64,000 bases of DNA, taken from the IMG/VR virus record IMGVR_UViG_3300031576_000001, positions 1 through 64,000 of that record; one strand, 5' to 3'. The translations under genes were made by a program, and so were the position numbers. Below are positions 4,387 to 53,472 of the stretch, one piece after another. Within the stretch, counting starts at the first letter, position 1; each line of letters begins with the position of its first letter. The notes beneath the pieces are model-generated. The model saw only the letters and a program-made list of their open reading frames with translations. It had not been told where the DNA came from and ran no database searches.

Positions 4387-4935
4387 AGACCCCACTGTAC
4401 ACCACCCCCTCGCTTCTCGCCAAACACGCCTTGCGCAACTGGCACAGAGGGTGTACAACCCCCGAGCCGGTTGTGTTTCATCCGGTACGCCCCCGCTAAT
4501 CACGGGGTCACCGTGCTCCCCCAGGCTAGTCCTGGGAACCCCCTCTCGGTCTGTCGGGGGTAGGCTCTTTGACAAGATGGGTAAGCTAAGCTCGGCGGCA
4601 GAAGCCCCTGCCAGTCTCTACCAAGAGGCTGGGGCAGGGCTAACCGATGGGTCTACGGGGGACTTCGACCCCCGGTGACCTACGCCGAGAATCCAGCCCT
4701 CCACGCACCTCCCCGTGCTCTACGCCTTCGGGCACCTAGAGCTACGGGGTTGAAACGTAGCCTCTCAGGAGAGGCTACTGGCATCACGGTGGAGGTCTCC
4801 CCGGTCAGCACAGGGTTGCAGTTGGCACAACCGCTGCAAGTGCTTCGATCCGGGGTCTAGGAAGTCAGGGAAGGTACGGTGTAGGACGCATACTACACTT
4901 ACCTACACCCTCCATATCACCTCCTCGGTTTCGTA

Positions 4936-5293
4936 GGGGGGTAGGGGGGTTAACCTTAAACGGTCTGTACTAACAGTACAGACCTAATTTCCTAGAGGAT
5001 CTCTCTTCATAGAAACACAAACCCTTGTGTTTCTAAGTCTGAAGAGGATCTTAGAGCCCCAAACACTAAAGAAAACAGCAATGATAACGCAAATAGTCCA
5101 ACAATAAGTCCAAATAGTCCAGCAAAAGATACAGAAACAGAAACAAATACCGCAAATAGTCCAACAGAAACCGCAAATACAGCAAGTCCAAGTAGTTCAG
5201 CAAACCGTTCAAGTACCTCAGCAAGTGCAAACGCAGATACAGACGATACGAGCGATGATAGTAGAGCGAGTAAAGTTAACCCCCCTACCCCCC
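4936..5293. repeat. 19-bp perfect inverted repeat (GGGGGGTAGGGGGGTTAAC / GTTAACCCCCCTACCCCCC) enclosing an A-rich tract with CAAATAGTCCA repeats; candidate replication origin
   Basis: Arms at 4936-4954 and 5275-5293, internal hairpins, strong strand bias, located between divergent gene blocks. Confidence 0.6.
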
Positions 5294-5664
5294 ACGGTCA
5301 AAAAACACCCAGGGTCACTTGAGACCCACCCGGAGTAGGCTACGCCCTCTAGGTAAGAAGATACTCCCCCTACCCCCTCTTAGGTAAGAAGATACCCAGA
5401 GGAGGTTCTCAGAGAAAAACTGAGAAAAGCCCTTGCAAGTATCTCTTAGTTGAAGTAGAGAAGTACCGACAATTGCAGACTCCTTCTAAGTGAGAGATCA
5501 CCACGGGGCCGATCTGCGTCTAAAATACGGAAACCACGGAGAGAGACCGTGGAAAAGCGGGTCAGAGAGAGACTGACCACAAGTTAAAGCCCCAGTAAAC
5601 CCCCATATAAGGCTCCTACACGCTGTCTCACTAGAGAAGACGGGGCACAAGCTCGGATGGGGAA

Positions 5665-5701
5665 GCCAGCAGCGAAATTGATGCCTTCGGGCGTTGAGCA
5701 C
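5665..5701 (+). CRISPR. Solitary CRISPR repeat-like unit (I-B/Myxan-like)
   Basis: TGATGCCTTCGGGCGTTGAGCAC matches the repeat core at 52796-52831; flanked by near-identical ~20-nt direct repeats (5660-5680 and 5702-5721). Confidence 0.6.
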
Positions 5702-6352
5702 GGGAAGCCTCAGCGAAATTGCAGTAAAGAAGCACAGCAGCAAGGCAGAGAGAGACTGCCGTAGAAAAGCTCGAAAAGAGCACCCAGACCTCAGAGCGAG
5801 ACTGAGGACCAGCGAAGCTACTACAGAGCACACCTACCTACCTCTTAGGTGGAGGGCTCAAACACGTCTTGGAGCGAGACCAAGAAGCCAAAGCAGTAAA
5901 GGTTATCGCGGACTACCCTCTAAGCCGACCCCACTATGGGGGTCCACCGTGGGTAGGAGTACTCTCAAGTGTTCTCAGGTAAGAGTGTAAGCCTTGCCCT
6001 GAGAGTGCGAGAGAAAGACGGGATAGTAGTGTGAAGAGAGGGCTTCGCCCTCTAAGTAGAGAAGACTCCCCTGGTCAGGTGGAAATGTGGTCTAGTGTCA
6101 TCTACACTCTAGGTGAAGATGGCGAAACTAGACGCATGGTTCTACGCGATTCTCCTGGCGGTATTTCTGGCTTGGAGGGTCAAGGAGCACCTGAGACGGT
6201 AGTATTGCCTTCATGTGGGGTGGTAGCGCACTTCTGGTTATTCAGGGTGACATTGCCCTATCAAAGTGATTGAATTTCTTGCCAAGCTACGAAGAAGCGT
6301 GCAAGGTGGCGCACAGTCGATCTGGATCAGGGGTTCGACTGAGGAGGCGCAC

Positions 6353-22555: not shown

Positions 22556-22628
22556 CCGCGCAAATCCTTGGTGGTCTAGGTACCTGTCTGATATACAGGC
22601 GATGGGAGTTCGACTCTTCCTGCGCGGA
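22556..22628 (+). tRNA. tRNA-Ile(GAT)
   Basis: CCTGT-CTGATAT-ACAGG. Confidence 0.8.
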
Positions 22629-22630
22629 CT

Positions 22631-22703
22631 GTGGCCGGTGGTTGCATGGTGCGACCGTCTAACTGTGAATTAGACTTCAGAGGGTTCGATTCCCTTCGGT
22701 CAC
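22631..22703 (+). tRNA. tRNA-His(GTG)
   Basis: TCTAA-CTGTGAA-TTAGA. Confidence 0.8.
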
Positions 22704-22929
22704 TCTGGCGTGCCTAGGGCACGTCTTACGCTTTCCGTTCCGGCTTGAAAGTCTTGGGCTGCGCGCGTACACCCAAGAGGAGTAGAGAGAGGGAGACTCT
22801 AACCAGATTGATCCTCTGGTGTACATCTGAAAAGAGGGGAGACCTGTGTGCGAGTCACAGGGAGGGCACTAGTCGAGAGCAGTGTTGAATGGTTCAGCGA
22901 GGGAGAGGATGCCCGACTGCCCGACGAAT

Positions 22930-23001
22930 TCCGAGGTTGTCAACGGTAGGGCGACCACACTGTTACTGTGGTGTTTGCAGGTCCGACTCCTGCCCTCGGA
23001 G
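22930..23001 (+). tRNA. tRNA-Asn(GTT)
   Basis: CCACA-CTGTTAC-TGTGG. Confidence 0.75.
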
Positions 23002-23303
23002 CCCGGTACGCGGAAGGGGTAAGCGATGCCTCTTCGTGCGTGCCTGAGATTACGTGCTCTAGTTCAACGCTAGAACAACGTCACTGGCTCGTCGTGGGCC
23101 GGCGTGTAGATGCAACGCACGGTGTGCTCCGCGCTAGCCTTTGGTTAGTTGCACAGACTACCCTTTGGTTTGACACCCAAAGGTGGCCCGTCTTGGACAA
23201 GACAGGGGTATCTCACCCCTCGGAGTCCCATGAGGATGACGAAATCAGAACCGGCGGAGGCTGTGTTTACACGGTCGAAGAAACCGGGGACGGAGAGAAC
23301 TAT

Positions 23304-23376
23304 GCCACCCAAGCACATCTGGTGATTGCAGTCCCCTGAAGAGGGAAACGGCCCGGTTCGATCCCGGGGGGTGGCA
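23304..23376 (+). tRNA. tRNA-Phe(GAA)
   Basis: TCCC-CTGAAGA-GGGA. Confidence 0.8.
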
Positions 23377-23449
23377 CTACGGGCGACAAGACTTGTGGTT
23401 CGAGTCCACACTGATTCTTCTGAGAGACGAAGGGTCGGGTAACGGATAA

Positions 23450-23523
23450 CAGCGTGAAGTCTTATGGCGAGACGCCAGTTCGGGGAACTGGAGATCGGAG
23501 GTTCAATTCCTCTCACGCTGACC
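23450..23523 (+). tRNA. tRNA-Pro(GGG)
   Basis: CCAGT-TCGGGGA-ACTGG. Confidence 0.75.
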
Positions 23524-23597
23524 GCGGAAGAGTGGCACGGTTCCATAGCTGGCTCATACCCAGAATACATTCAGTTCAACTCTGATTTCCGCCACCA
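23523..23597 (+). tRNA. tRNA-Met(CAT)
   Basis: CTGG-CTCATAC-CCAG; encoded CCA end. Confidence 0.75.
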
Positions 23598-23607
23598 GTG
23601 AAGACAT

Positions 23608-23684
23608 TGCGGCGTGGAGCAGCCTGGAAGCTCGCAAGGCTCATAACCTTGAGGTCGTCGGTTCAAATCCGACCGCTCGCGACA
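23608..23684 (+). tRNA. tRNA-fMet-like (CAT)
   Basis: GTGGAGCAGCCTGGAAGCTCG...CTCATAA...GGTCGTCGGTTCAAATCCG is close to bacterial initiator tRNA. Confidence 0.85.
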
Positions 23685-23685
23685 A

Positions 23686-23790
23686 AGAGTGTAGTCAAAG
23701 AAGAGGGTTACTTCCTCTAGTAAGAGAAACCTGACGGTTCGATTCCGTCCCGGCGTGGTCGCCATACACTCTCTTCGTTCATCTCACTCT
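23686..23790 (+). ncRNA. YrlA-like Y RNA with an internal T arm
   Basis: AGAGTG-T-AG-TCA..GAAGAGGGTTACTTC..GACGG-TTCGATT-CCGTC..CTCTCTTC..CT-CACTCT. Confidence 0.8.
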
Positions 23791-23793
23791 CTA

Positions 23794-23867
23794 TCCTCGG
23801 TAGCTCAAGTGAAGAGCACCTCCTGTTTACAGGGGTTGATGCTAGGTTCGATGCCTAGCCCTTGGGC
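23794..23867 (+). ncRNA. tRNA-like RNA with an expanded anticodon arm (CTG-TTTA-CAG)
   Basis: Canonical D and T arms; imperfect acceptor stem. Confidence 0.55.
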
Positions 23868-23917
23868 AATCCGTGATGGGGCAACTCGGGCAACAGGGTA
23901 CCCAGCACGGTCGTATT

Positions 23918-23986
23918 GTGCAAGAGTCAAGGCGACAACGTGGTTTCCAAATCCACGGAAGGTGGGTTCGATTCCTCCCTTGCACG
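23918..23986 (+). tRNA. tRNA-Trp(CCA)
   Basis: CGTGG(T)-TTCCAAA-(T)CCACG. Confidence 0.65.
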
Positions 23987-23988
23987 CT

Positions 23989-24088
23989 AGGTGTAGTCAA
24001 GCCCAGAGGTTCATCATACAATAGATGCTGGCTCCCTTGCGAGAGCCAGCACCCCGTACCAAACCACCTCTTGGTAACAATCTCACCT
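23989..24088 (+). ncRNA. Y-RNA-like RNA
   Basis: AGGTG-T-AG-TCA..AGAGGTTCATC..internal hairpin..ACCTCT..CT-CACCT. Confidence 0.7.
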
Positions 24089-24093
24089 TTTCT

Positions 24094-24113
24094 GGCGTCG
24101 TGGCTCAGTGGTT
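24094..24113 (+). pseudogene. 5' fragment of a tRNA disrupted by the HNH insertion
   Basis: GGCGTCGTGGCTCAGTGGTT ends at the HNH promoter. Confidence 0.55.
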
Positions 24114-24134
24114 GGGCCGGTGTATGCACATCTT

Positions 24135-24500
24135 ATGGCTGAATCAGAGCTTGTGACTTGTTGTGGTAAGACAATACAAAAGAGGCACCTCAAGACGCAC
24201 TTGAGGCTCAAGCACAAAGACTTCTCTCTCATACGTAGGGACTCAACACGGAGAGAGCGCCTTATTGTTGAGAGGGGGCATCGTTGTCAGGTGTGTGGCA
24301 TGTCTGAATGGATGGGCGTCAACATACCCATTGAGCTTGACCATACTGATGGCAATTGTGAAAACAATACGAGGGAGAACTTGAGGCTAATATGCCCCAA
24401 TTGCCATGCCCAAACTCCGACCTATCGGGGTAAGAATATGGGTAAAAGTGGGCATACCAAGCGAGCGACTATACTGAAGAAGTATGGTAGTTATCGTTGA
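24135..24500 (+). CDS. HNH homing endonuclease
   Basis: CQVC...ELDHTDGNCENNTRENLRLICPNCHAQT; lower GC; GGTGTA 10 nt upstream. Confidence 0.9.
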   Translation: MAESELVTCCGKTIQKRHLKTHLRLKHKDFSLIRRDSTRRERLIVERGHRCQVCGMSEWMGVNIPIELDHTDGNCENNTRENLRLICPNCHAQTPTYRGKNMGKSGHTKRATILKKYGSYR

Positions 24501-24503
24501 TTC

Positions 24504-24574
24504 GGTGCCGTAGCTTGAAGGTCAAGCCAGGAGCTTTTAACTCTTAGTTGAGGGTTCGATTCCCTCCGGCGCCA
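24504..24574 (+). tRNA. tRNA-Lys(TTT)
   Basis: AGGAG-CTTTTAA-CTCTT. Confidence 0.8.
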
Positions 24575-24632
24575 CGAGGCTCGGGATACTTTTTGCAGCC
24601 TGCAATAGTGTTCACAACCTGAGCCTTACTAG

Positions 24633-24706
24633 GGGAGTCTAGTTGGTCTGGTGACCGCGCTTGCTTCATAAGCAAGTTTAGAAGGGTTCGATCCCCTTGG
24701 CTCCTA
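24633..24706 (+). tRNA. tRNA-Met/Ile2(CAT)
   Basis: CTTGC-TTCATAA-GCAAG. Confidence 0.7.
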
Positions 24707-24834
24707 CGAGCTGAACCTGCGAGGGTCCGGCTAATTTGCCCTGGCGACGGGGTAGGGGTTGCCCCGAGAGTGTCTTGGTACACAACGGCGGCGTTGATGG
24801 TTCAGCCTCAGACTCGACCCATGGGGCATTACAA

Positions 24835-24905
24835 GGGGTTATCGTCCAAAGGCAGGACGGCAGATTTGCATTCTGCAAATTTCGGTTCGAGTCCGAATTA
24901 CTCCA
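24835..24905 (+). tRNA. tRNA-Cys(GCA)
   Basis: GCAGA-TTTGCAT-TCTGC arm. The loop can also be read with TGC central, so the anticodon call is tentative. Confidence 0.6.
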
Positions 24906-24913
24906 CGACAGAT

Positions 24914-24986
24914 CAGGGAGAAGCCCTATGGTGGGGCGCCAGTTTCGGGAACTGGAACTTCGCGAGTTCAATTCTCGCCTCCCTGA
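24914..24986 (+). tRNA. tRNA-Pro(CGG)
   Basis: CCAGT-TTCGGGA-ACTGG. Confidence 0.8.
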
Positions 24987-25063
24987 CTATGGGTGCGTCT
25001 CTTAGGACGCCAGGGTCGCCTGGTACCTTGACACACCCGTTACGTGACTTACCGTCACGTTTC

Positions 25064-25153
25064 GCCCTGGTAGCTCAACTACGAGAGCGCCCCTGTAGTG
25101 TCCCCAGGGACCAACAGGGGAGGTTGGAGGTGCAAATCCTTCCCCGGGCCCCA
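25064..25153 (+). ncRNA. tRNA-like RNA whose anticodon arm is replaced by a long hairpin; CCA end
   Basis: CCCCTGT..GTCCC-CA-GGGAC..ACAGGGG lies between normal D and T arms. Confidence 0.65.
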
Positions 25154-25158
25154 TGTTT

Positions 25159-25233
25159 GCCAACGTAGCCCAACTAGGTAGAGGCAACTGCCCGAGGCGC
25201 AGTACAGTGAGAGTCCGAATCTCTTCGTTGGTA
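25159..25233 (+). tRNA. tRNA-Leu(GAG), short variable arm
   Basis: ACTGC-CCGAGGC-GCAGT. Confidence 0.7.
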
Positions 25234-25243
25234 CTTGATAAAG

Positions 25244-25314
25244 CGTGCTGTTTCCCTTGGAGGGTGGGCGGTCTTCTAAACCGCTACGTGTGTGTTCAAT
25301 TCTCACCAGCACGA
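25244..25314 (+). tRNA. tRNA-Arg(TCT)
   Basis: GCGGT-CTTCTAA-ACCGC. Confidence 0.7.
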
Positions 25315-25317
25315 CAA

Positions 25318-25389
25318 TGCGTGGGCGTCCCGGGGACAACAGAGGCTTTGACCCTCTGGAAAAAGGTTCGACTCCTTTCTCGCGTACCA
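25318..25389 (+). tRNA. tRNA-Gln(TTG)
   Basis: AGAGG-CTTTGAC-CCTCT; CCA end. Confidence 0.75.
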
Positions 25390-25452
25390 AGGTGTAGTCA
25401 CTCAGAGGGTTACTTCGGCAAGAACAGGCACCCTCTAAACTCTATCTCACCT
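25390..25452 (+). ncRNA. Minimal Y-RNA-like RNA
   Basis: AGGTG-T-AG-TCA..AGAGGGTTACTTC-GGCAA-GAA..ACCCTCT..CT-CACCT. Confidence 0.75.
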
Positions 25453-25458
25453 TCCAAT

Positions 25459-25529
25459 GGAACCGTAGCTCTAAGGCAGAGCACGACGCTCTTAACGTCA
25501 GGGTCAGGGTTCGATTCCCTGTGGTTCCA
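25459..25529 (+). tRNA. tRNA-Lys(CTT)
   Basis: GACG-CTCTTAA-CGTC. Confidence 0.8.
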
Positions 25530-25612
25530 CGATAGGAGCAGTCACTTGAGTAGGCAGGTGAGAGCAGACGTGCTTAGGGTCGCCAGACGCAACCCTCTGT
25601 TTTTGCTTACAA

Positions 25613-25688
25613 CGCGCAAACGTCTCTGGTGGGGCAAACAGCCTGACGTGCTGTTCTTGGACGGGTTCGATTCCCTCTTGCGTGACCA
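25613..25688 (+). tRNA. tRNA-Val(GAC)
   Basis: ACAGC-CTGACGT-GCTGT; CCA end. Confidence 0.7.
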
Positions 25689-25724
25689 GCGTAAAGCCCT
25701 ATGGTGGGGCGCTTGCTTTGGGTA
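25687..25724 (+). pseudogene. 5' half of tRNA-Pro(TGG) truncated at the anticodon loop by the HNH insertion
   Basis: CAGCGTAAAGCCCTATGGTGGGGCGCTTGCTTTGGGT has the same D arm as tRNA-Pro(CGG) at 24914. Confidence 0.7.
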
Positions 25725-25761
25725 CGTGGCACGCTCCTGTGCGTTCAGTCATACTAACTGC

Positions 25762-26208
25762 GTGAGTACCAGCAAGTGCTTCAAGTGTAAGTTGACCCTA
25801 CCTACAAGCGAGTTTTCCATTCGCCCCAACGGGAAGCCTACGAGCTACTGTAAAACTTGCCAACGGAGTGCATCTAAAGCCCACTACCAAGCAAACAAGA
25901 CAGCGCACAATCAACGGCGTTGGGCAAGTATTATAAAGTATCGTGATAACGTGACTTCTCACGTTATAAAGATCAAAGAAGGTAGTCCGTGTGTGGACTG
26001 CCACGAGTACCACCCGTACTGGGCTATGGACTTTGACCACCGCGACCCCGCAAACAAAGAGTTCTGTATAGGGCAAGCGGTAAACTTTGGCTACTCACTT
26101 AGTCGTGTGGACGCAGAGATCGCAAAGTGCGACCTTGTTTGCGCGCTGTGCCACAGGTACAGAACTTACGGTCAGCGCAGAAACTTCCGGGTTGTAGCCA
26201 AAAGGTGA
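25762..26208 (+). CDS. HNH-family homing endonuclease
   Basis: CFKC..CKTC zinc finger; CVDC...MDFDHRDP..K...EIAKCDLVCALCHR. Confidence 0.85.
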   Translation: MSTSKCFKCKLTLPTSEFSIRPNGKPTSYCKTCQRSASKAHYQANKTAHNQRRWASIIKYRDNVTSHVIKIKEGSPCVDCHEYHPYWAMDFDHRDPANKEFCIGQAVNFGYSLSRVDAEIAKCDLVCALCHRYRTYGQRRNFRVVAKR

Positions 26209-26259
26209 GGCACCTGTTTTGGGAACAGGTTAATGGCAGTTCGAGTCTGCTCAACCCGA
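26188..26259 (+). tRNA. tRNA-Pro(TGG)
   Basis: CCTGT-TTTGGGA-ACAGG; overlaps the HNH stop codon. Confidence 0.8.
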
Positions 26260-26271
26260 CTTACTATAGTA

Positions 26272-26335
26272 CAGCGTGTGCTCATGGTTACGGGAGTACA
26301 GGAACCAGGGGGTCCGATTCCCTCTACGCTGACCA
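26272..26335 (+). ncRNA. 64-nt truncated tRNA-like RNA (acceptor and T arm, CCA end, single middle hairpin)
   Basis: CAGCGTG/TACGCTG-ACCA; GGGGG-TCCGATT-CCCTC. Confidence 0.55.
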
Positions 26336-26447
26336 GGGTGCCTTTGCTAGTGGAGTGACCTCCCCCAACTCCAACCTCTGCTAGTGACTGCGCGCCCTAT
26401 TCTATACACATTAGGCTGGAACCCATCATTTCAGTCTAATGAGCTAA

Positions 26448-26520
26448 CCCGTTGAAGTCCTCTGGTGGGGACACCACATTGTCAATGTGGCCTTGGCGAG
26501 TTCAATTCTCGTCAGCGGGA
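26448..26520 (+). tRNA. tRNA-Asp(GTC)
   Basis: CCACA-TTGTCAA-TGTGG. Confidence 0.75.
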
Positions 26521-26676
26521 CTACCTGTACCCAACAGTCTCTTCCTACACGCTACTCTACTTCCTGGTTCGATTCCAGGGCACTGCACCTCACGGACAGC
26601 AGAGCTAGCCTAACGGTAAAGGCATTCGTTTTACCAACGGACACTCAACGGAGAGGCAACTCGGGCACGGTAACAT

Positions 26677-26756
26677 GCAGACGTGGTGTAACGGTAGCCA
26701 CGGTGGTCTTAGAAGCCACTGCCTAAAGCGTAGGGGTTCGACTCCCCTCGTCTGCA
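26677..26756 (+). tRNA. tRNA-Leu(TAG)
   Basis: GTGGT-CTTAGAA-GCCAC; variable arm present. Confidence 0.85.
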
Positions 26757-26781
26757 CAAGCCATCGGTGTAAGGTATTCAC

Positions 26782-27210
26782 ATGCAAGCTCTAGCGCTCA
26801 TCGTTTCCGTAGTGGCAGCCTTGGTTGTCATGGCGTTCGTTTCTGAGTCGGGTTCGAGGCTCCGCACGTTTAGTTTGGGGTGCCTCATGGCTCTCGGGGG
26901 CGTTCTCTTCTACGCCCTGCTCACGGTGTACCCCTTCATGGTGGGGTGGAACTGGCTCATGCCGGGGGTCTTTGGGTTGAAGACTCTGGACTTCTGGCAA
27001 GCCTTGGTGCTCATCCTCCTGGCGGGTGTGTTGTTCCACTCTGGGGCTGTTAGCACCAAGAGCGACTTAGGGTTTGTTAGACACAACCCCCTCTTTGCAA
27101 AGAGGGAACACGCTAACGTATTCCAACGGCAGAGAAAGCGGCCTCAGATACCGCAAAGTGTGGGTTCGAGTCCCACCGTTAGCACTGTGAGTCTGTTGGA
27201 AGACTACTAG
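26782..27210 (+). CDS. Small membrane protein
   Basis: Three hydrophobic segments; WNWLMPGVFGLKTLDFWQAL; GGTGTA 10 nt upstream; 3' end runs over a tRNA. Confidence 0.65.
   Translation: MQALALIVSVVAALVVMAFVSESGSRLRTFSLGCLMALGGVLFYALLTVYPFMVGWNWLMPGVFGLKTLDFWQALVLILLAGVLFHSGAVSTKSDLGFVRHNPLFAKREHANVFQRQRKRPQIPQSVGSSPTVSTVSLLEDY
27112..27184 (+). tRNA. tRNA-Leu(CAG), short variable arm
   Basis: GCGG(C)-CTCAGAT-(A)CCGC. Confidence 0.75.
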
Positions 27211-27302
27211 AAAGCAAGACCATTTGGGGGCGTGTATCCCGCATGCTCCCCCCCTCAGATCAAAACCAAAGCAAGGTGGTCCCCGGATAGAGTTTTCCTT
27301 CT

Positions 27303-27378
27303 GCTCCCGTCGTCTAAAGGTAGGTACACTGGGTTCTCAACCCAGAAATGGCGAGTTCAATTCTCCCCGGGAGTACCA
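27303..27378 (+). tRNA. tRNA-Glu(CTC)
   Basis: CTGGG-TTCTCAA-CCCAG; CCA end. Confidence 0.85.
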
Positions 27379-27388
27379 CACACAACTT

Positions 27389-27463
27389 GTCTCCGATGCT
27401 CAATGGAAGGGCGCGTGTCTACGGAACACGTATTTGAGAGTTCGAGTCTCTCCGGGGATGCCA
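27389..27463 (+). tRNA. tRNA-Arg(ACG)
   Basis: CGTGT-CTACGGA-ACACG; CCA end. Confidence 0.85.
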
Positions 27464-27470
27464 GACACAA

Positions 27471-27542
27471 GCCCTTACGGTGCGATGGACGCACACGACC
27501 CTCCGAAGGTCGTCCGTGTCGGTTCGATTCCGACTAGGGGCT
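27471..27542 (+). tRNA. tRNA-Arg(CCG)
   Basis: CGACC-CTCCGAA-GGTCG. Confidence 0.8.
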
Positions 27543-27588
27543 CTCTGCGGTGTATGTCAGCATTGGTTGGCAATACTCTTTCAGTCTT

Positions 27589-27675
27589 GGAACTTGACGG
27601 CTCAATGGTGAGGCCACTAGTCTTGAAAACTAGCTACACCCGAGAGGGTGAGGGGTTCGATTCCTCCTGGTTCCT
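27589..27675 (+). tRNA. tRNA-Ser(TGA)
   Basis: CTAGT-CTTGAAA-ACTAG; long variable arm. Confidence 0.85.
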
Positions 27676-27684
27676 CTGTGTGTT

Positions 27685-27770
27685 GGAAGGCAGAGCCTCA
27701 TGGTGAGGCGCGAGCGTGCTAAGCTCGGTCTAGTCCTCTTGGGACTGTGGTTCGATTCCACTACCTTCCG
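27685..27770 (+). tRNA. tRNA-Ser(GCT)
   Basis: CGAGC-GTGCTAA-GCTCG; long variable arm. Confidence 0.8.
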
Positions 27771-27773
27771 CAA

Positions 27774-27857
27774 GTGCGTAGTCACGAGAGACGGTTACTT
27801 CAACAAAACTGGTGAAATTACCCCCGCAAGGGGGACCGTAGCTCAACAATCTCGCAT
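27774..27857 (+). ncRNA. Y-RNA-like RNA
   Basis: GTGCG-T-AG-TCA..GACGGTTACTTC..GAA..CCCC-GCAA-GGGG..ACCGT..CT-CGCAT. Confidence 0.75.
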
Positions 27858-27865
27858 GATTCTAC

Positions 27866-27941
27866 GCTAGCGTAGCCCAACTAGGCAGAGGCAGCGCACT
27901 CAAAACGCGCAAAGGTGAGGGTCCGAGTCCCTCGGCTAGCA
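27866..27941 (+). tRNA. tRNA-Leu(CAA), short variable arm
   Basis: GCGC(A)-CTCAAAA-(C)GCGC. Confidence 0.75.
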
Positions 27942-27989
27942 CTCAAGACCACAGAGAGGGTGTCTTGTAGACGTACTCGCTCTGGTTTA

Positions 27990-28061
27990 GCTCCCATCGA
28001 CTACTGGCTAGGTTATCGGTTTTTCACACCGAGGGACGGAGATCGATACTCCGTGGGAGCA
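27990..28061 (+). tRNA. tRNA-Glu(TTC)
   Basis: TCGGT-TTTTCAC-ACCGA. Confidence 0.8.
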
Positions 28062-28066
28062 CTTTT

Positions 28067-28139
28067 GCCACGCTAGTCCTCTGGGGAGGGCGCTTGCTTT
28101 ACACGCAAGATTAGCAGGGTTCGATCCCCTGGCGTGGTA
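28067..28139 (+). tRNA. tRNA-Val(TAC)
   Basis: CTTGC-TTTACAC-GCAAG. Confidence 0.8.
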
Positions 28140-28182
28140 CCGAGAGGGGGGCACGGTGTTCCTGTGTAACTCTCTCGACTCT

Positions 28183-28255
28183 GGGTTCTGAGCCGCAAAG
28201 TGTGGCAGTGTGACTGTTAATCCACCGAAGCTGGGCGCGATTCCCAGAGAGCCCT
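28183..28255 (+). tRNA. tRNA-Asn(GTT), divergent
   Basis: Anticodon loop CTGTTAA; GGGTTCT/AGAGCCC acceptor. Confidence 0.6.
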
Positions 28256-28264
28256 CTGGTTACT

Positions 28265-28359
28265 GGTCCTTAAGTTGTACCCCCCTTGGTAACCCAAGCG
28301 TGGGGAGGGGACGCTTGCTGTAGTAGGCAAGGCAGGTTCGACCCCTGCGGGACCAACCA
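28265..28359 (+). ncRNA. Atypical tRNA-like RNA with an elongated D region; CCA end
   Basis: TGGTCCT/GGGACCA-ACCA; GCAGG-TTCGACC-CCTGC. Confidence 0.55.
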
Positions 28360-28366
28360 CTTTCAA

Positions 28367-28431
28367 TCCCAGGTCGTCTAAGGGTAAGGCGATTGACTTT
28401 GACTCGATGTCCCTGTGGGTTCGAGTCCCTC
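28367..28431 (+). pseudogene. tRNA-Gln(TTG) lacking the 3' acceptor strand
   Basis: ATTGA-CTTTGAC-TCGAT and the T arm are present, but there is no CCTGGGA; it abuts the HNH. Confidence 0.6.
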
Positions 28432-29122
28432 TACTCCTACTCGTTCCCGGTTTGCTTCGTAAGTGCGAACCCATTGGCGTATACAGTTATCAGAGACGCC
28501 GTACTTGACCCCGACTGCCACGAAAGAGGACTCCTCTATGTCTTTTTTCAGTGTATCAAAAGTAGGTCTAACCACCTTGCGTCTATGGAATTGTGGCTCT
28601 CTATTAGTGAAGAAGCATTTTCTACCACAGTACTTCTTCCCTAGTGGTGCTTGGTTGAAACATCTTTTGCTGGCGCACTTGGACCTCCTACGTTTACCGC
28701 AATGGGTGGGGAGCGTAGCGTTACAATTTGGGCATACAATGCGTAGGTTCTCCAACCTGTGGTCATTACGCACCCCATTGATCTGATCCAAGATTAGGGC
28801 CATTTTACATCCATTCCAAATCTCGCCTTGACCACAAAGCTCACACTCTCGTCTTTAGGCCCTCCTTGTACAACCTCTCCTTAATGTGTGTTGTGGTGTA
28901 CTTGCTCCCTTCTACAAGTATTTGTTCTATGGGGGCCGCAACAGGAATACAATTTCTCGTCCCGAAGTGAGACGTGTCTGCTCCTAGAGATTCGTAGTGT
29001 TCACGGACTTTCACTCTTGTCTTCATGCAACCCCTAGCAAATCCTAGCCGGTACATAACGTCTGAGAGAGACGAAGCAGCAGCTACTACTTTCAACAAGT
29101 CCTCGTCTGTGTATCGTGCCAT
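28378..29122 (-). pseudogene. Degenerate HNH homing endonuclease (frameshift near 28845; catalytic His apparently replaced by Gln)
   Basis: LKTRV* continues in another frame as ECELCGQGEIWNG...LILDQING..NDHRLENLRIVCPNC. Confidence 0.75.
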
Positions 29123-29136
29123 GTGTGCAGTATTAG

Positions 29137-29207
29137 TCCCGGTTCGTCTAACGGCAAGACAATTCGCTCTGAACGAAAGAACAGTGGTTCGATTCCATTA
29201 CCGGGAA
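29137..29207 (+). tRNA. tRNA-Gln(CTG)
   Basis: TTCG-CTCTGAA-CGAA. Confidence 0.85.
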
Positions 29208-29284
29208 CCGAGACCAGACCTCTCCTTCTACGAGGGGTCGGTGAGCTTTGGTGGCGCGTCACAGTGGCTTGCCAGGTCTCTCTT

Positions 29285-29355
29285 GGGGTTGTAAGTCAAC
29301 GGGAGACTGGTGCCCTTGCAAGGCACAAATGAGGGTTCGATTCCCTCCGACTCCA
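29285..29355 (+). tRNA. tRNA-Ala(TGC)
   Basis: GTGCC-CTTGCAA-GGCAC; G3-U70 pair. Confidence 0.85.
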
Positions 29356-29362
29356 CTAGTGC

Positions 29363-29433
29363 GCTGTGCTCGTCTAACGGTAAGCCGCCACATTGGTATT
29401 GTGGGAATTCGGGTTCAACTCCCGGGCACAGCT
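29363..29433 (+). tRNA. tRNA-Thr(GGT)
   Basis: CCACA-TTGGTAT-TGTGG. Confidence 0.85.
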
Positions 29434-29439
29434 CTCTTT

Positions 29440-29511
29440 GCGACATTGAGCCAAAGGCTGGTTACGACCTTGCCAAGGTCGGTTATGGGGGTTCGAGTCC
29501 CCCATGTCGCT
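29440..29511 (+). tRNA. tRNA-Gly(GCC)
   Basis: CGACC-TTGCCAA-GGTCG. Confidence 0.8.
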
Positions 29512-29512
29512 C

Positions 29513-29629
29513 AGGTCTCTGGCAGAAGCCAAGACACGCCAGGATTCTAGACACTTCTGGCGTGTCTCCGGTGGAAATTGCGCCCCCGTAGCTACGGGGT
29601 GTATACTGGTTCAAATCCAGTGGGGCCTA
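29513..29629 (+). ncRNA. tRNA-like RNA with two long non-canonical arms
   Basis: GGTCTC/GGGGCC acceptor; AGACACGCCAG/CTGGCGTGTCT stem; ACTGG-TTCAAAT-CCAGT T arm. Confidence 0.6.
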
Positions 29630-29634
29630 CTAAT

Positions 29635-29705
29635 GCGGCTCTCGTTCAAAGGCAGGATGAGAGTTTTCCAAACTCATGATCAGGGTTCGATTCCCTGGAG
29701 CCGCA
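29635..29705 (+). tRNA. tRNA-Gly(TCC)
   Basis: GAGT-TTTCCAA-ACTC. Confidence 0.8.
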
Positions 29706-29841
29706 CTCCATGAAACGTGCTCTCTTTTCATCGTGCAAAGGCCCTGCAAACCACAGCAACAAGGCTTGTGTCTGTGGGGCGCACTCTCGCAAGGCGCGTG
29801 ATAAGCGTCTACGGTGGTCCAGGGCGCGGGTTGTATCTGAA

Positions 29842-29913
29842 GGGGTTGTAGTCCAACGGAAAGACGCAGCGTCGGCAACGCTGAAATAGCGGGTTCGATT
29901 CCCCTCTACTCCA
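29842..29913 (+). tRNA. tRNA-Ala(GGC)
   Basis: CAGCG-TCGGCAA-CGCTG; G3-U70 pair. Confidence 0.75.
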
Positions 29914-30099
29914 CAACACAGGCGCACCAAAGTACACGGGGCGTGTGTGCAGTCCGTAAAGGCAGTAGGTAGGAGACTACTCATGTTCCTGCCCTGACGC
30001 GTTGGTACTCCGTACCTAACCAGGGTGTTGGCCCGTTCAATTCGGGTCTAGGGGGAGCGTGGACGTGTGGTGTAGGGCAGCACAGTACGGGCGAGTTTT

Positions 30100-30172
30100 T
30101 GACGTGGCGTCAAGGCTGACACAGCCGTCTGCAAAACGGCTTGACTATGGGGTTCGAGTCCCCTCTACGTCT
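30100..30172 (+). tRNA. tRNA-Cys(GCA)
   Basis: GCCGT-CTGCAAA-ACGGC. Confidence 0.75.
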
Positions 30173-30176
30173 CTCT

Positions 30177-30254
30177 GGGCATGGTCAGCGATTACTCAAA
30201 GTAAGGGAAGTCCTAAATCGCGTGGAGAGGGTGCGACTCCCTCCTTGTCCACCA
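30177..30254 (+). ncRNA. Atypical tRNA-like RNA with a CCA end
   Basis: GAGGG-TGCGACT-CCCTC T arm; ACCA end; no canonical anticodon arm. Confidence 0.5.
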
Positions 30255-30255
30255 C

Positions 30256-30633
30256 GGGGATGAATTGGCTTCGATCAGGGCTAAGCATTCTCACTCGCAG
30301 GCGCGCTTTTCCTGGCCGTAGCGCTAAAAGAAGCTGGGGACCGACAACTGCCAACGACAACGTTGAAGCTGCTCCTCTCGCCCTCGCGGCGTTAGGTGGT
30401 TGGGGTGGGCTAGATACCCTTAGTAACCCCCTCGACTCAAAAGTGACCAAGGGTGCGCTGCCCGACGACGCGCTGTAAGAGTAGGGTGGCTAAGAGCGAG
30501 TTTACAGACATGGCCAGGCGTGACCTTGGAAACCCACCTCTCAGGGGAGACTGTAGAGAGGAAAGCCTGTAAACATAGAGAGTGGGCGATCTTTACTCTG
30601 AGACCGCGGGATCGAACCCGCGCATCTCCACCA
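30256..30633 (+). ncRNA. ssrA: tmRNA
   Basis: GGGGATG..GGCTTCGA 5' end, CATCTCC-ACCA 3' end with G3-U70, T arm, and tag frame ANDNVEAAPLALAA from 30350. Confidence 0.95.
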
Positions 30634-30729
30634 ACTGTTTCGTAATTATGCGAAACGCCCCGTCACCTAGAGACCTTGTTTGGCAGTCGGTACCCGCGTT
30701 CCGACTCTCTTGGTGGCGGGTACCCTTTT

Positions 30730-30800
30730 GCCCCTGTAGCTCAATAGAAGAGCAGTAGCCTTGTAACCTACCGACGACGGTGCAATCCCGTCCTGGGGCT
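30730..30800 (+). tRNA. tRNA-Thr(TGT)
   Basis: GTAG(C)-CTTGTAA-(C)CTAC. Confidence 0.8.
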
Positions 30801-30808
30801 CTCAGAAT

Positions 30809-30880
30809 GGACTGCGACGGTCTGGTTGACCTGCGACAGCTTATATCTGTTTTGTCAGGGTTCAATTCCCTGGCAGTCCA
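30809..30880 (+). tRNA. tRNA-Ile(TAT)
   Basis: ACAG-CTTATAT-CTGT. Confidence 0.75.
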
Positions 30881-31182
30881 CTGTGCTCGTTTGGTTGTGA
30901 GGTCACGGTTGAAAGCACCGGAGTAGCTACCGGTTGAGTAAGCCGTGCCAGTAACAACCTGACTGTCGTGAACGTGACGATGGTTTAGTTGCCCCTCTTC
31001 GATGGGAGGTGTGCGGATCGAAGACGAGCACTTTTCTCGCTGTGCTAGTTCAAAAAGAAGAACTGCGGTCCCGTACCCCGCTAATGACAGTGCAAGTCTG
31101 TCGCACAGCTCCAAGGGTGAGCGTATCGACAATCACCTACAGGTACACCCCGCGAAGATCGCGTAGTGTGTGCGGTAAAGAA

Positions 31183-31255
31183 GCCCCTGTAGTCTAGTGG
31201 AACAGGCTACCGTTTCCTATACGGTCTTACGTAGGTTCGATTCCTACCAGGGGCG
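31183..31255 (+). tRNA. tRNA-Arg(CCT)
   Basis: ACCGT-TTCCTAT-ACGGT. Confidence 0.8.
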
Positions 31256-51509: not shown

Positions 51510-52718
51510 ATGAAGATCAAATTTACCACGTCTGCCTTGCAGTCAGCGCTGGCACTAGCCGGCGTAGTCCCTCCGAAGTCTGCCATACCGACCCAGCCCG
51601 CGGCGTACCTTTTCATGCCCACGGGGTCGGGGACCGGGGTGCAGATACACTCGCGCGACGGGTTGCAAGAGGCTCGGGCTGAAGTGCCTTGTGAAGCAGA
51701 GGACTTTGACGCCCCGTTCCTCTTTGCGGCGACCTACGCTGACGCGCTGTCTTTTTCGGGGGAGTACGTCACCTTCGAGACCAAAGAGGAACAAGGGACA
51801 ACCCTGCTTGGTTACGTGGGGGAGCGTGGTAACCGTAGTGACCGCCCCCTCTTGGACGCGGCCTTGGTGCTCCCCATAACCACGCCGCTCGACGATGACG
51901 CTCAGGTTTTCAACGTGAGCACGTTGTTGGACGCCCTCAACCAAGCAAAAGCCTTCCTCCCCAAGCTCAACGACCCCACGGTGGAAGAACCCTACAAGAC
52001 GGTCATGCTGGTGGACAGCGCTAGCACGGGCAAGAAGATTGGTACGGGGCACCTCTACGTGAGCGACAGTTACCGCGCGTTTTACTGCCACACCCCGGAC
52101 TTTGAGGGTAAGGCGTTCAACCTTCACGGCACGTACCTCCCCACCGTGACCAGCTTCCTAGCCAAGCTGGGCGACTCCACGGTCAAGGTACTCTCCACCC
52201 CTCGCAAACTGTGGCTCATGGGGAGTACCGCCGTCCTTGCCGTGCCTGGCGCTACCAAAGTTCACGAGCGGGTCACTTTGTACACCAAGGACACCGTGAC
52301 GCTGCAAGTCCCCCGTGAGCTTTTGGTGGCAGCGTTGAAGTACCTGCGGGGTGACATGGAGAGCAAGCTGGTCAAGGTCAAGGTGCTGTATGAGCCTGAC
52401 CCTGGCACGTTGGCTTTTGTGGCAGTCAACGGTTCTACCAAGAGCCAGAGCTTCCCGGTACCTGCCAAAATCAAAGAGGGCACCGAGGCATCCACGGACA
52501 GTAAGACCTTCCAGGTCAACATTGACCACCTCTTGTCACTGGTAGCGTCGTGCCGGGGTCAAGTGGTCGAGGTACGGTTCAACTACCAGAGCCGGGACGG
52601 TCAAGACATGGTGCTCCTACGTACCGTGGACGAGTACCACCTCTCCGAAGAGGGTAAGGTGGTCGCCACAGGCGGTGCGCTTTGCAAAGCCACACGTTAC
52701 GTGGGGTCCATGGGCTAA
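51510..52718 (+). CDS. Putative DNA polymerase III beta sliding clamp
   Basis: MKIKFTTSALQSALALA, SDSYRA, FQVNIDHLLSLV; ~400 aa; clamp-loader genes nearby. Confidence 0.7.
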   Translation: MKIKFTTSALQSALALAGVVPPKSAIPTQPAAYLFMPTGSGTGVQIHSRDGLQEARAEVPCEAEDFDAPFLFAATYADALSFSGEYVTFETKEEQGTTLLGYVGERGNRSDRPLLDAALVLPITTPLDDDAQVFNVSTLLDALNQAKAFLPKLNDPTVEEPYKTVMLVDSASTGKKIGTGHLYVSDSYRAFYCHTPDFEGKAFNLHGTYLPTVTSFLAKLGDSTVKVLSTPRKLWLMGSTAVLAVPGATKVHERVTLYTKDTVTLQVPRELLVAALKYLRGDMESKLVKVKVLYEPDPGTLAFVAVNGSTKSQSFPVPAKIKEGTEASTDSKTFQVNIDHLLSLVASCRGQVVEVRFNYQSRDGQDMVLLRTVDEYHLSEEGKVVATGGALCKATRYVGSMG

Positions 52719-52723
52719 GCATG

Positions 52724-52831
52724 GTGTACCCCTCTGTGTAAGCCTTCGGGCGTTGAGCACACGCCAAGGGTCAGCAGATCGCCGTGGCCTGGGACGTGAT
52801 CTCGACAGTGATGCCTTCGGGCGTTGAGCAG
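52724..52831 (+). CRISPR. Mini CRISPR array: 2 repeats (37 and 36 nt) and 1 spacer (35 nt); no cas genes in the window
   Basis: R1 GTGTACCCCTCTGTGTAAGCCTTCGGGCGTTGAGCAC; spacer 52761-52795; R2 GTGATCTCGACAGTGATGCCTTCGGGCGTTGAGCAG. Confidence 0.75.
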
Positions 52832-52845
52832 AGTAGGTACCCACC

Positions 52846-53472
52846 TTGACTTACGACCGGATGACACAGCTAAAGCAAGCGAGTCTTCTCCTACAAGCCA
52901 GGCGAGACGCCCTGACCGAGGAGAAGGCTCGCTTGACCGCTGAGCTTTCGCGCCTAGATGTCCGGGTCATGCTGCTAGCCAAGGTGGGGGAACTGTACCG
53001 TCACCTTCTGGACTCCTTGGTACTCCACCAAGCCCAGGGCATGAGTCAGATTGCCACGGAGGGTCTAAAGGCAGTACTACACGACCAAGACCTTGCCGTG
53101 GTGCCTGACATGGGGCAACGGGCGGGGCGCGTGACCTTGCAGTTTCTCTTGCAACAAGGCGGTGAGGGTGGACCGAAGGGGCTACCGCAGTCCTCTTTCG
53201 GGGGTGGTCCTACGTCGCTTACCTCGCTCATCTTGCGTGTGCTTTTGCTGCTACGCACCGGTAGAGCCAAGTTCTTGATTCTGGACGAGACCCTTGGACC
53301 TTTGAGTGACCAGTACATCGAGCCGGCGGGTAAGTTTCTGGCTCAACTGTCCAGGTCAACGGGGGTGCCCATCCTCTTGGTGACTCACAAGAGCCAGTTT
53401 CTCGAAGAGGCTACCCAGAGGCTCCTGGCTACCGAGGGCGCTGGACCCCAGTTGGTGCTAAAGCGCGTCTAA
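52846..53472 (+). CDS. SbcC/Rad50 C-terminal ATPase half
   Basis: Signature SFGGG, Walker B FLILDE, H-loop LVTH. Confidence 0.85.
   Translation: MTYDRMTQLKQASLLLQARRDALTEEKARLTAELSRLDVRVMLLAKVGELYRHLLDSLVLHQAQGMSQIATEGLKAVLHDQDLAVVPDMGQRAGRVTLQFLLQQGGEGGPKGLPQSSFGGGPTSLTSLILRVLLLLRTGRAKFLILDETLGPLSDQYIEPAGKFLAQLSRSTGVPILLVTHKSQFLEEATQRLLATEGAGPQLVLKRV

What the first reader, a model, noticed from the sequence alone, without database searches (positions are those of the whole stretch)
52724..52831. Cas-less one-spacer mini-CRISPR array inside the replication operon
Seen: two 36-37-nt repeats share the 3' half GCCTTCGGGCGTTGAGCA (hairpin plus handle) but differ in the 5' half. They flank a 35-nt spacer, ACGCCAAGGGTCAGCAGATCGCCGTGGCCTGGGAC, which reads like high-GC coding DNA (AKGQQIAVAWD). 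The array sits between the beta clamp and the Rad50 C-half, with no cas operon in the window. Established: repeats ending TGATGCCnnnnGGCGTTGAGCAC typify I-B/Myxan systems, and phage mini-arrays can borrow host Cascade. Inference: the phage uses host Cas6/Cascade to target a competing element or repress a host gene.
Basis: partly seen in the sequence, partly recalled or inferred. Interest (0 to 1): 0.75.

Follow-up and report, generated by a model that had tools for sequence, protein, structure and literature searches.

The report
Cas-less CRISPR mini-array in jumbo phage
A giant phage from a cave metagenome has no cas genes but carries one repeat-spacer-repeat unit and two lone repeat copies that mimic the CRISPR repeats of a myxobacterium-like host; this is a known kind of phage trick for borrowing or jamming host CRISPR immunity, seen here for a repeat family where it has not been studied.

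Summary
Two copies of GCCTTCGGGCGTTGAGCA lie 71 nt apart at 52742 and 52813. They form a 37-nt degenerate repeat, a 35-nt spacer and a full 36-nt repeat.

The motif is the conserved 3' part of a widespread 36-nt CRISPR repeat family. Its host arrays (period 70-73 nt) sit beside type I-MYXAN cas operons (cas6/cmx6, cas3, cas8a1, cas7/devR, cas5/devS, cas4-cas1). The closest host repeat, in a Polyangiaceae MAG, matches repeat C at 33 of 36 positions and the solitary unit at 184005 at 27 of 27.

The 322.6-kb phage record has no cas genes. Two related phages have the same gene order but no gap and no repeats at this junction, so the array is a lineage-specific insertion.

I found no protospacer in the phage, viral contigs, metagenomes, reference phages or 401 host-order genomes. 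No RNA data exist.

Best reading: repeat mimicry that engages host Cas6 and Cascade. The mini-array would give one crRNA of unknown target, and the solitary units would act as Racr-like decoys. It is a new member of known kinds, of moderate interest.

The parts
52724..52760 (+). Repeat B (upstream, 37 nt). The 5' part is degenerate. The hairpin core plus handle GCCTTCGGGCGTTGAGCAC is intact, but the stem is weakened (TAAGCC in place of GATGCC).
   Evidence: It shares 22 of 36 positions with repeat C, almost all of them in the 3' part. Folding predicts only a 3-bp hairpin.
52761..52795 (+). Spacer, 35 nt, 69% GC, target unknown.
   Evidence: Its length fits the host arrays, whose period is 70-73 nt with 36-nt repeats. 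It has no self-match at up to 11 mismatches. No protospacer was found in the collections searched.
52796..52831 (+). Repeat C (downstream, 36 nt). A full-length member of the I-MYXAN repeat family, with G instead of C as its last base.
   Evidence: It matches the repeat of a Polyangiaceae MAG array (L098) at 33 of 36 positions.
52719..52845 (+). Intergenic insertion that carries the mini-array, between the clamp-like gene and the ATPase gene.
   Evidence: In relatives L189 and L190 the ATPase gene overlaps the end of the clamp gene. They have no gap and no repeat motif at this junction.
5679..5701 (+). Solitary repeat unit A: only the hairpin plus handle (TGATGCCTTCGGGCGTTGAGCAC), inside a roughly 1.1-kb non-coding, repeat-rich region.
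   Evidence: No second repeat follows it within 100 nt.
51510..52718 (+). Upstream gene: sliding-clamp-like DNA polymerase processivity factor.
   Evidence: phrog_947, E = 6.7e-6. Homologues sit in syntenic phage loci.
52846..53472 (+). Downstream gene: ATPase (phrog_15167). Its N-terminus is shortened and rewritten compared with the relatives. The start may be TTG at 52846 or the in-frame ATG at 52861.

Best explanation
The phage carries CRISPR-repeat mimics of its host's type I-MYXAN (a type I-B variant) system and no cas genes of its own. What is shown: the mini-array at 52724-52831 is a minimal one-guide crRNA gene, inserted into a + strand replication operon. Its upstream repeat keeps only what an upstream repeat has to supply, the hairpin and the last 8 nt. 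Its downstream repeat keeps what a downstream repeat has to supply, the full 5' part and the hairpin. What is inferred: host Cas6 (Cmx6) cuts the phage transcript at the base of each GAUGCC-UUCG-GGCGUU hairpin. This releases one crRNA (5' UUGAGCAC, then the 35-nt spacer, then the repeat-derived 3' end), which loads into host Cascade (Cas8a1-Cas7-Cas5). The complex is guided to a high-GC target that has not been identified, most likely a competing mobile element of the same host. The two solitary units (5679-5701 and genome 183997-184023) have a hairpin and handle but no downstream repeat. They most likely act as Racr-like decoys that occupy Cas6 and Cascade subunits. The likely host is a relative of a Polyangiaceae (Myxococcota) MAG.
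For: Family identity: the motif marks arrays of 5 to 93 units with a 70-73-nt period in Myxococcota, Planctomycetota, Cyanobacteriota, Acidobacteriota and others. The consensus is 36 nt, with a variable 13-nt 5' part and a conserved 3' part. Cas type: the arrays lie next to cas6/cmx6, cas3, cas8a1/cmx1, cas7/devR, cas5/devS and cas4-cas1. Geometry: the phage period of 71 nt and spacer of 35 nt equal the host modes. Host match: repeat C matches at 33 of 36 positions and unit D at 27 of 27, both to the same Polyangiaceae repeat, which has the same TTCG loop. Uneven conservation: all four units share an identical 18-nt hairpin-plus-handle core while their flanks are unrelated. Orientation: all units read in the crRNA sense, like the host arrays downstream of their cas genes, and lie on the strand of the neighbouring genes. 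Insertion: two syntenic relatives lack the gap and the repeats. No cas genes in the phage. Precedent: other unrelated viral contigs carry Cas-less mini-arrays or single units of this family. The literature covers host-Cas use by huge phages, Racrs and Cracrs.
Against: No protospacer was found anywhere. No RNA data exist, so transcription and processing are unproven. Repeat B's stem carries an A-G mismatch and an extra base, which may impair Cas6 recognition. The true host is not identified; the best repeat match is 33 of 36, found in a single MAG out of 151 family genomes searched. The record is estimated 68% complete, so cas genes could lie in a missing part. No sigma-70-like promoter was detected near the units, although the phage may use other promoters.
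Confidence: 0.55

Rival explanations
1. All four units, including both repeats of the mini-array, are RNA anti-CRISPRs (Racr-like decoys). They titrate Cas6/Cmx6 and Cascade subunits into aberrant complexes. The 35-nt 'spacer' has no target and only reflects the element's origin from a host array.
For: Two of the four units are truly solitary and keep exactly the Cas6-type hairpin and handle. No target was found for the spacer. Racrs are documented as solitary repeat units in viral intergenic regions that match the host subtype.
Against: The R-S-R geometry is preserved to the nucleotide (71-nt period, 35-nt spacer). The downstream repeat keeps a host-like 5' part, which a pure hairpin decoy would not need. 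Most CRISPR spacers lack database matches anyway.
Confidence: 0.2
2. The mini-array is a Cracr, a viral crRNA-like regulator. Its spacer pairs only partly with the promoter of the host's cas operon or of a CRISPR-guarded toxin, so host Cascade binds without cleaving and shuts down its own expression.
For: The architecture, with a degenerate first repeat, is that of crRNA-like RNAs. I found host mini-arrays of this same repeat family whose spacers have ATG-flanked partial copies (13-15 of 17) about 100 nt away, in four phyla including the candidate host MAG. The Myxococcus I-MYXAN dev operon is strongly auto-repressed by DevTRS.
Against: The phage spacer is not similar to the host mini-array spacer in the candidate host MAG. 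It has no ATG-flanked partial target in 788 kb of host loci beyond chance, and none in the MAG. The spacer is full length and looks like coding DNA.
Confidence: 0.12
3. The units are Cas6-dependent, or simply structural, RNA processing or stability sites that the phage uses for its own polycistronic transcripts, with no anti-defence role.
For: Host genomes carry standalone units directly in front of genes: cas4-cas1 in three lineages and tuf in two Planctomycetes. All phage units lie upstream of + strand genes, and repeat C ends 14 nt before the ATPase start.
Against: Relatives express the same operon without any such site. A complete spacer plus a full downstream repeat is not needed for a cleavage site.
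Confidence: 0.07
4. The element is a non-functional relic: a piece of host array DNA picked up by illegitimate recombination, or a site for recombination with host arrays.
For: The upstream repeat is degenerate, no target was found, and the spacer's GC content is host-like.
Against: There are three separate loci with a perfectly conserved 18-nt core, all on the same strand and all outside genes, while the flanks are unrelated. That pattern argues for selection on the hairpin and handle.
Confidence: 0.05
5. The units are ordinary terminators or regulatory hairpins that resemble CRISPR repeats only by chance.
For: Each unit contains a small GC hairpin with a UUCG loop.
Against: Repeat C matches a host repeat at 33 of 36 positions and unit D at 27 of 27. 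There is no T-run, no terminator was called in the gap, and the fold z-scores are not significant.
Confidence: 0.01

Closest known systems
Virus-borne Cas-less mini-CRISPR arrays (Medvedeva et al. 2019, PMC6858448; huge-phage arrays, Al-Shayeb et al. 2020, PMC7162821)
   Same: One or a few spacers flanked by repeats that match the host's arrays. The virus has no cas genes and is presumed to use host Cas proteins.
   Different: In the described cases the spacers match competing viruses or host genes. Here no target was found. The repeat family (I-MYXAN) and the position inside a replication operon are new details.
Racrs: RNA anti-CRISPRs, solitary repeat units (Camara-Wilpert et al. 2023, PMC10651486)
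   Same: The units at 5679-5701 and at genome 183997-184023 are solitary, lie outside genes, keep the Cas6-type hairpin and match a host repeat.
   Different: They cover only 22-27 of the 36 repeat nt. No own promoter, small RNA or inhibition has been shown. No acr-like neighbour could be recognised. No unit of this family appears in the stored part of that paper's catalogue.
Cracrs and crRNA-like regulators (Liu et al., bioRxiv 10.1101/2024.10.29.618823; Shmakov et al. 2023, PMC10120712)
   Same: The architecture is the same: degenerate repeat, spacer, repeat. Host counterparts of the same repeat family exist and have nearby partial targets.
   Different: The defining partial match of the viral spacer to a host cas or toxin promoter, or to a host regulator's spacer, was not found.
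Host type I-MYXAN CRISPR arrays (for example Sorangium So ce176, and the Polyangiaceae MAG contig behind L098)
   Same: The same 36-nt repeat family, the same 70-73-nt period and the same reading orientation.
   Different: Host arrays have 5 to 93 units, a leader and an adjacent cas operon. The phage has two repeats, no leader that could be recognised and no cas genes.

Membership tests
CRISPR array of the type I-MYXAN repeat family | Direct repeats that fit the 36-nt family consensus (variable 5' part, then TGATGCC-NNNN-GGCGTTGAGCAC) | tested here: met
   Repeat C fits over its full length (33 of 36 to a host repeat). Repeat B fits in the 3' 19 nt only.
CRISPR array of the type I-MYXAN repeat family | Repeat-spacer period and spacer length as in host arrays | tested here: met
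   The period is 71 nt and the spacer 35 nt. Host modes are 70-73 nt.
CRISPR array of the type I-MYXAN repeat family | Adjacent cas operon (cas6/cmx6, cas3, cas8a1, cas7, cas5, cas4-cas1) | tested here: not met
   There are no hits for Cas6, Cmx6 or DevR models. tblastn with 11 host Cas proteins gave only spurious hits, in DUF1848 and ThyX-like genes. The record is about 68% complete.
CRISPR array of the type I-MYXAN repeat family | Transcription and Cas6 processing into crRNA | not testable with these tools
   Only DNA runs from a cave metagenome hold the region, and no RNA run was listed.
Virus-borne mini-array for inter-virus conflict | Spacer matches a competing virus or other mobile element | tested here: not met
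   No match in IMG/VR (5' 20-mer: 0 hits; the 3' 20-mer hits do not extend), in JGI metagenomes (seed pattern: none extends), in INPHARED, with a wobble-degenerate pattern, or in 401 host-order genomes. The searches needed exact seeds, so diverged targets could have been missed.
Racr (solitary repeat unit, RNA anti-CRISPR) | Solitary repeat-like unit outside genes on a mobile element, with the Cas6-binding hairpin retained | tested here: met
   This holds for the units at 5679-5701 and at genome 183997-184023, which have no partner within 100 nt. A long alternative ORF could read through unit D, but the likelier start lies downstream of it.
Racr (solitary repeat unit, RNA anti-CRISPR) | Matches the CRISPR subtype of the actual host | tested here: inconclusive
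   Unit D is 27 of 27 identical to a Polyangiaceae MAG repeat that sits next to a complete I-MYXAN operon, but the phage's host is only inferred from this match.
Racr (solitary repeat unit, RNA anti-CRISPR) | Expressed as a small RNA and inhibits CRISPR interference | not testable with these tools
   This needs expression data and interference assays.
Cracr / crRNA-like regulator | Mini-array made of a degenerate repeat, a spacer and a repeat | tested here: met
.
Cracr / crRNA-like regulator | At least 9 PAM-proximal nt of the spacer match a host cas or toxin promoter, or a host regulator's spacer | tested here: inconclusive
   There is no ATG-flanked partial target and no similarity to the host mini-array spacer in the available loci. 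The true host's locus is not available.

The most novel reading that the evidence does not exclude
The mini-array is the first Cracr for the type I-MYXAN system. It would reprogram the host's DevTRS-type Cascade to silence the host's own cas operon, or a CRISPR-guarded toxin. The two solitary units would add decoy activity, so a single jumbo phage would combine two RNA-based anti-CRISPR modes.
Probability: 0.12. Interest if true: 0.7.

Novelty: new member of a known kind. Interest (0 to 1): 0.4.

Why it matters
The repeats give a concrete, testable host assignment for an uncultured 322-kb cave phage: a relative of a Polyangiaceae MAG that carries an I-MYXAN system. They also extend virus-borne repeat mimicry to the I-MYXAN family of Myxococcota, Planctomycetota and Cyanobacteriota, for which I found no characterised viral mini-array, Racr or Cracr in the literature searched. 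One genome carries both a complete one-guide array and solitary units, which makes it a convenient natural system for asking whether guide delivery and decoy action are used together. The side observation may be of wider use than the phage element itself: host crRNA-like mini-arrays of this family with ATG-flanked nearby targets suggest a mechanism for the long-known DevTRS autoregulation in Myxococcus.

Tried and rejected
1. Spacer target. Searches that found nothing:
- The phage genome, up to 11 mismatches.
- 1.1 Mb of fetched loci, up to 10 mismatches.
- IMG/VR with the 5' 20-mer: 0 hits.
- IMG/VR with the 3' 20-mer: four contigs with one shared sequence, but the PAM-proximal 15 nt do not match, so I rejected it as a protospacer.
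- INPHARED blastn: chance-level only.
- JGI metagenomes with the 5' 24 nt and N at positions 6, 12 and 18: 22 foreign hits, none of which extends.
- A codon-wobble pattern in IMG/VR: 0 hits.
- 401 genomes of the candidate host's order, up to 3 mismatches: 0 hits.
- Nine partial hits in the host MAG: none extends and none has an ATG flank.
- PAM-aware partial search: chance-level.

2. A resemblance between the spacer and the sequence after a Gemmataceae standalone unit (L124) lies within the shuffle null.

3. None of 1,722 fetched spacers of the family targets the phage. The single readable spacer of the host MAG does not either.

4. Three weak tblastn Cas hits clustered at 221-225 kb. They fall in DUF1848 and ThyX-like proteins and are spurious.

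5. Sigma-70 promoter and terminator scans found nothing at the units.

6. Single-sequence folding of the 36-nt units is uninformative.

7. The search for related loci with the clamp protein found no relatives. The relatives came from the protein search instead, and their whole records could not be searched.

8. The proteins next to unit D match no Acr or Aca family.

9. Using the tmRNA gene as a host clue gave only 32-nt matches. The Planctomycetota comparison was not run.

Full report
**1. What is there**

The window is the first 64 kb of a 322,633-bp IMG/VR virus record. It is linear, estimated 68% complete by CheckV, and is contig Ga0247727_10000022 from a cave metagenome. It is a jumbo phage of about 59% GC with some 23 tRNA genes and a tmRNA gene at 22.5-31.3 kb.

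The finding lies in a + strand replication/recombination module. The gene order is SbcD-like phosphoesterase, PD-(D/E)XK nuclease, sliding-clamp-like protein (51510-52718), a 127-nt gap, ATPase (52846-53472), Toprim primase, metallopeptidase, clamp loader.

**2. The observation**

The exact 18-mer GCCTTCGGGCGTTGAGCA occurs at 52742 and 52813, 71 nt apart. The window holds three exact copies against 0.07 expected. The genome holds four, all on the + strand, and a reversed-pattern control gave none.

- Repeat B: 52724-52760, 37 nt.
- Spacer: 52761-52795, 35 nt.
- Repeat C: 52796-52831, 36 nt.

The other two copies, at 5683 and at genome position 184005, have no partner nearby. A de novo scan found no other CRISPR-like repeat pair in the genome. 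An independent assembly of the same sample gives the identical sequence.

**3. It is a real CRISPR repeat family**

I scanned one genome per prokaryotic species with GATGCC-NNNN-GGCGTTGAGCA. Most are arrays of 5 to 93 units with a 70-73-nt period, found in Sorangium, Myxococcus, Gemmata, Isosphaeraceae, many cyanobacteria, Acidobacteriota and others.

The consensus repeat is 36 nt. It has a lineage-specific 13-nt 5' part, usually starting GTG, followed by a conserved TGATGCC, a variable 4-nt loop and GGCGTTGAGCAC.

The arrays sit downstream of type I-MYXAN cas operons and in the same orientation:
- The complete Sorangium So ce176 locus reads cas6/cmx6, cas3, cas8a1/cmx1, cas7/devR, cas5/devS, cas4-cas1, array.
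- The same genes flank the arrays in a Polyangiaceae MAG, an Isosphaeraceae MAG and an Acidobacteria MAG.

**4. Fit of the phage units to that family**

- Repeat C is a full-length member. It matches the repeat of the Polyangiaceae MAG array (L098) at 33 of 36 positions, including the TTCG loop.
- The solitary unit at genome 183997-184023 is 27 of 27 identical to the same host repeat.
- Repeat B keeps only the 3' 19 nt intact. Its stem reads TAAGCC instead of GATGCC, and its 5' part only loosely resembles other family variants.
- The unit at 5679-5701 keeps 23 nt.

The pattern of conservation fits crRNA biogenesis as established for Cas6-type systems. This step is inference from general knowledge, not something tested here. 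An upstream repeat only has to supply the hairpin, where Cas6 cuts, and the 8-nt 5' handle. A downstream repeat has to supply its 5' part and the hairpin. The one base of repeat C that departs from the family consensus is its last base, which would belong to a following crRNA that does not exist.

All four units read in the crRNA sense and lie on the coding strand of their neighbours.

**5. No cas genes in the phage**

Pfam Cas6, NCBIfam Cmx6 and DevR models find nothing in the record. tblastn with eleven host Cas proteins gives only three weak hits, which fall in DUF1848 and ThyX-like proteins. The record is incomplete, so absence is not proven.

**6. The array is an insertion**

Two related phage contigs share the gene order around the array; their clamp proteins are 57% and 30% identical to this phage's. 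In both, the ATPase gene starts inside the end of the clamp gene, so there is no gap, and neither 13-kb locus carries the motif. The clamp C-terminus is conserved, whereas the ATPase N-terminus in this phage is shorter and different. The 127-nt block is therefore a lineage-specific acquisition placed in an operon. Transcription of the block is likely but not shown.

**7. The target**

I found none.
- The spacer has no counterpart in the phage itself.
- It has none in IMG/VR, JGI metagenomes, INPHARED, or 401 genomes of the candidate host's order, and none in the host MAG.
- A 20-nt match of its 3' end in four viral contigs is a single sequence whose PAM-proximal part does not match.

The collection scans need exact seeds, so diverged targets would be missed. 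The spacer's 69% GC and its open reading frame suggest that it came from a high-GC element or host.

**8. Known kinds it could belong to**

The literature defines three kinds of Cas-less viral repeat element:
- Mini-arrays aimed at competing viruses, and huge-phage arrays that may use host Cas proteins (PMC6858448, PMC7162821).
- Racrs: solitary repeats that trap Cas6 and Cas7 (PMC10651486).
- Cracrs: crRNA-like RNAs whose spacers partly match host cas or toxin promoters (bioRxiv 10.1101/2024.10.29.618823, PMC10120712).

The phage shows the anatomy of the first or third kind at 52.7 kb, and of the second kind at 5.7 kb and 184 kb. Other unrelated IMG/VR contigs carry single units or one-to-three-spacer mini-arrays of the same family, so the phenomenon is not unique to this phage.

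**9. A test of the Cracr reading, and a side finding**

The candidate host MAG holds a separate mini-array on contig C893. It consists of a degenerate repeat with an intact hairpin and handle, a 35-nt spacer, and a second repeat cut off right after the hairpin.

Three more host mini-arrays of this kind occur in a KSB1, a Planctomycetia and a cyanobacterial genome. In all four:
- The first 17 nt of the spacer have a partial copy (13-15 of 17) within about 100 nt (shuffle p of 0.07 or below, and three of them 0.01 or below).
- That copy is directly preceded by ATG.

This is the signature of crRNA-like autoregulators. It suggests an ATG PAM. One ordinary protospacer had ATA at that position. It also fits the DevTRS autoregulation of the Myxococcus dev operon.

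The phage spacer, however, resembles none of these spacers. It has no ATG-flanked partial target in the phage or in 788 kb of host loci beyond chance. The Cracr reading stays possible but unsupported.

**10. Verdict**

- The identity of the element is secure, at about 0.95: Cas-less, phage-borne copies of an I-MYXAN CRISPR repeat, one of them a complete one-spacer array.
- That the units act through host Cas6 and Cascade is the best-supported mechanism but remains an inference. Which of the known modes applies (guide, decoy or repressor) is open, because no target and no RNA data exist.
- It is a new member of known kinds, not a new kind.
- Interest is moderate, for three reasons. It links an uncultured jumbo phage to a Polyangiaceae-like host. 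It extends repeat mimicry to an unstudied subtype. It combines a guide-type element and decoy-type elements in one genome.

Noticed in passing
L192:330-425 (Polyangiaceae MAG G001:C893); L063:1016; L106:4442; L122:7765: Host mini-arrays of the same repeat family: a repeat, a 35-43-nt spacer, and a second repeat cut off after the hairpin. Each spacer has a partial copy (13-15 of 17 nt) about 100 nt away, directly preceded by ATG. This is the signature of crRNA-like autoregulators and suggests an ATG PAM for type I-MYXAN. In all four, that ATG is followed by an in-frame stop within 1-4 codons, which recalls CreT-type mini-ORF toxins.
   Followed up: partly
L072:2395-2418 and L121:6974-7015 (Planctomycetota): A standalone repeat unit (hairpin plus handle) lies 2 nt and 20 nt upstream of the start of tuf (EF-Tu; N-termini MAKETFTR...) in two different Planctomycete genomes. 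It could be a Cas6 processing site or a regulator on a core housekeeping gene.
   Followed up: partly
L098 (between cas5 and cas4-cas1), L041:487, L115: A standalone, slightly degenerate repeat unit lies immediately upstream of cas4-cas1 in three I-MYXAN operons. It is absent in Sorangium So ce176.
   Followed up: partly
window 4860-6030: A non-coding stretch of about 1.1 kb, A-rich on the + strand, holds solitary unit A. It contains several short hairpins with AGAGAGAGAC-like loops, three CAAATAGTCCAACA-type repeats and a 31-nt inverted repeat (4936-4966 and 5263-5293). Unit A itself is flanked by a direct repeat of about 20 nt (GGGAAGCC..CAGCGAAATTG). The stretch may be an origin or an early regulatory region.
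   Followed up: partly
window 22557-31255: A cluster of about 23 tRNA genes plus a tmRNA gene (30256-30633), as in other jumbo phages.
   Followed up: no
L140:2344-2450; L157:370-560 (also L161, L141); L149:384-560: Unrelated IMG/VR contigs carry Cas-less mini-arrays of the same repeat family with one to three spacers. In some, the last repeat lacks the handle or the spacer is duplicated.
   Followed up: partly
L162-L165 (IMG/VR contigs): Four viral contigs share one sequence that matches the last 20 nt of the phage spacer exactly but not its first 15 nt. I judged it a chance match, or at most a remote one.
   Followed up: yes
genome 218050-219940 (L207:51-1943), outside the window: An N6/N4 DNA methylase gene interrupted by an intein-like Hint domain.
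   Followed up: no
genome 300504-300609, outside the window: A tandem duplication with a 73-nt period, not related to the CRISPR repeat.
   Followed up: no
genome 183820-184130 (L004:1316-1625), outside the window: Solitary unit D lies 17 nt after the stop of a 55-aa ORF with no known family. It is followed by a strong 14-bp hairpin and then a membrane-protein gene. The small ORF is an untested anti-CRISPR candidate, by position only.
   Followed up: partly
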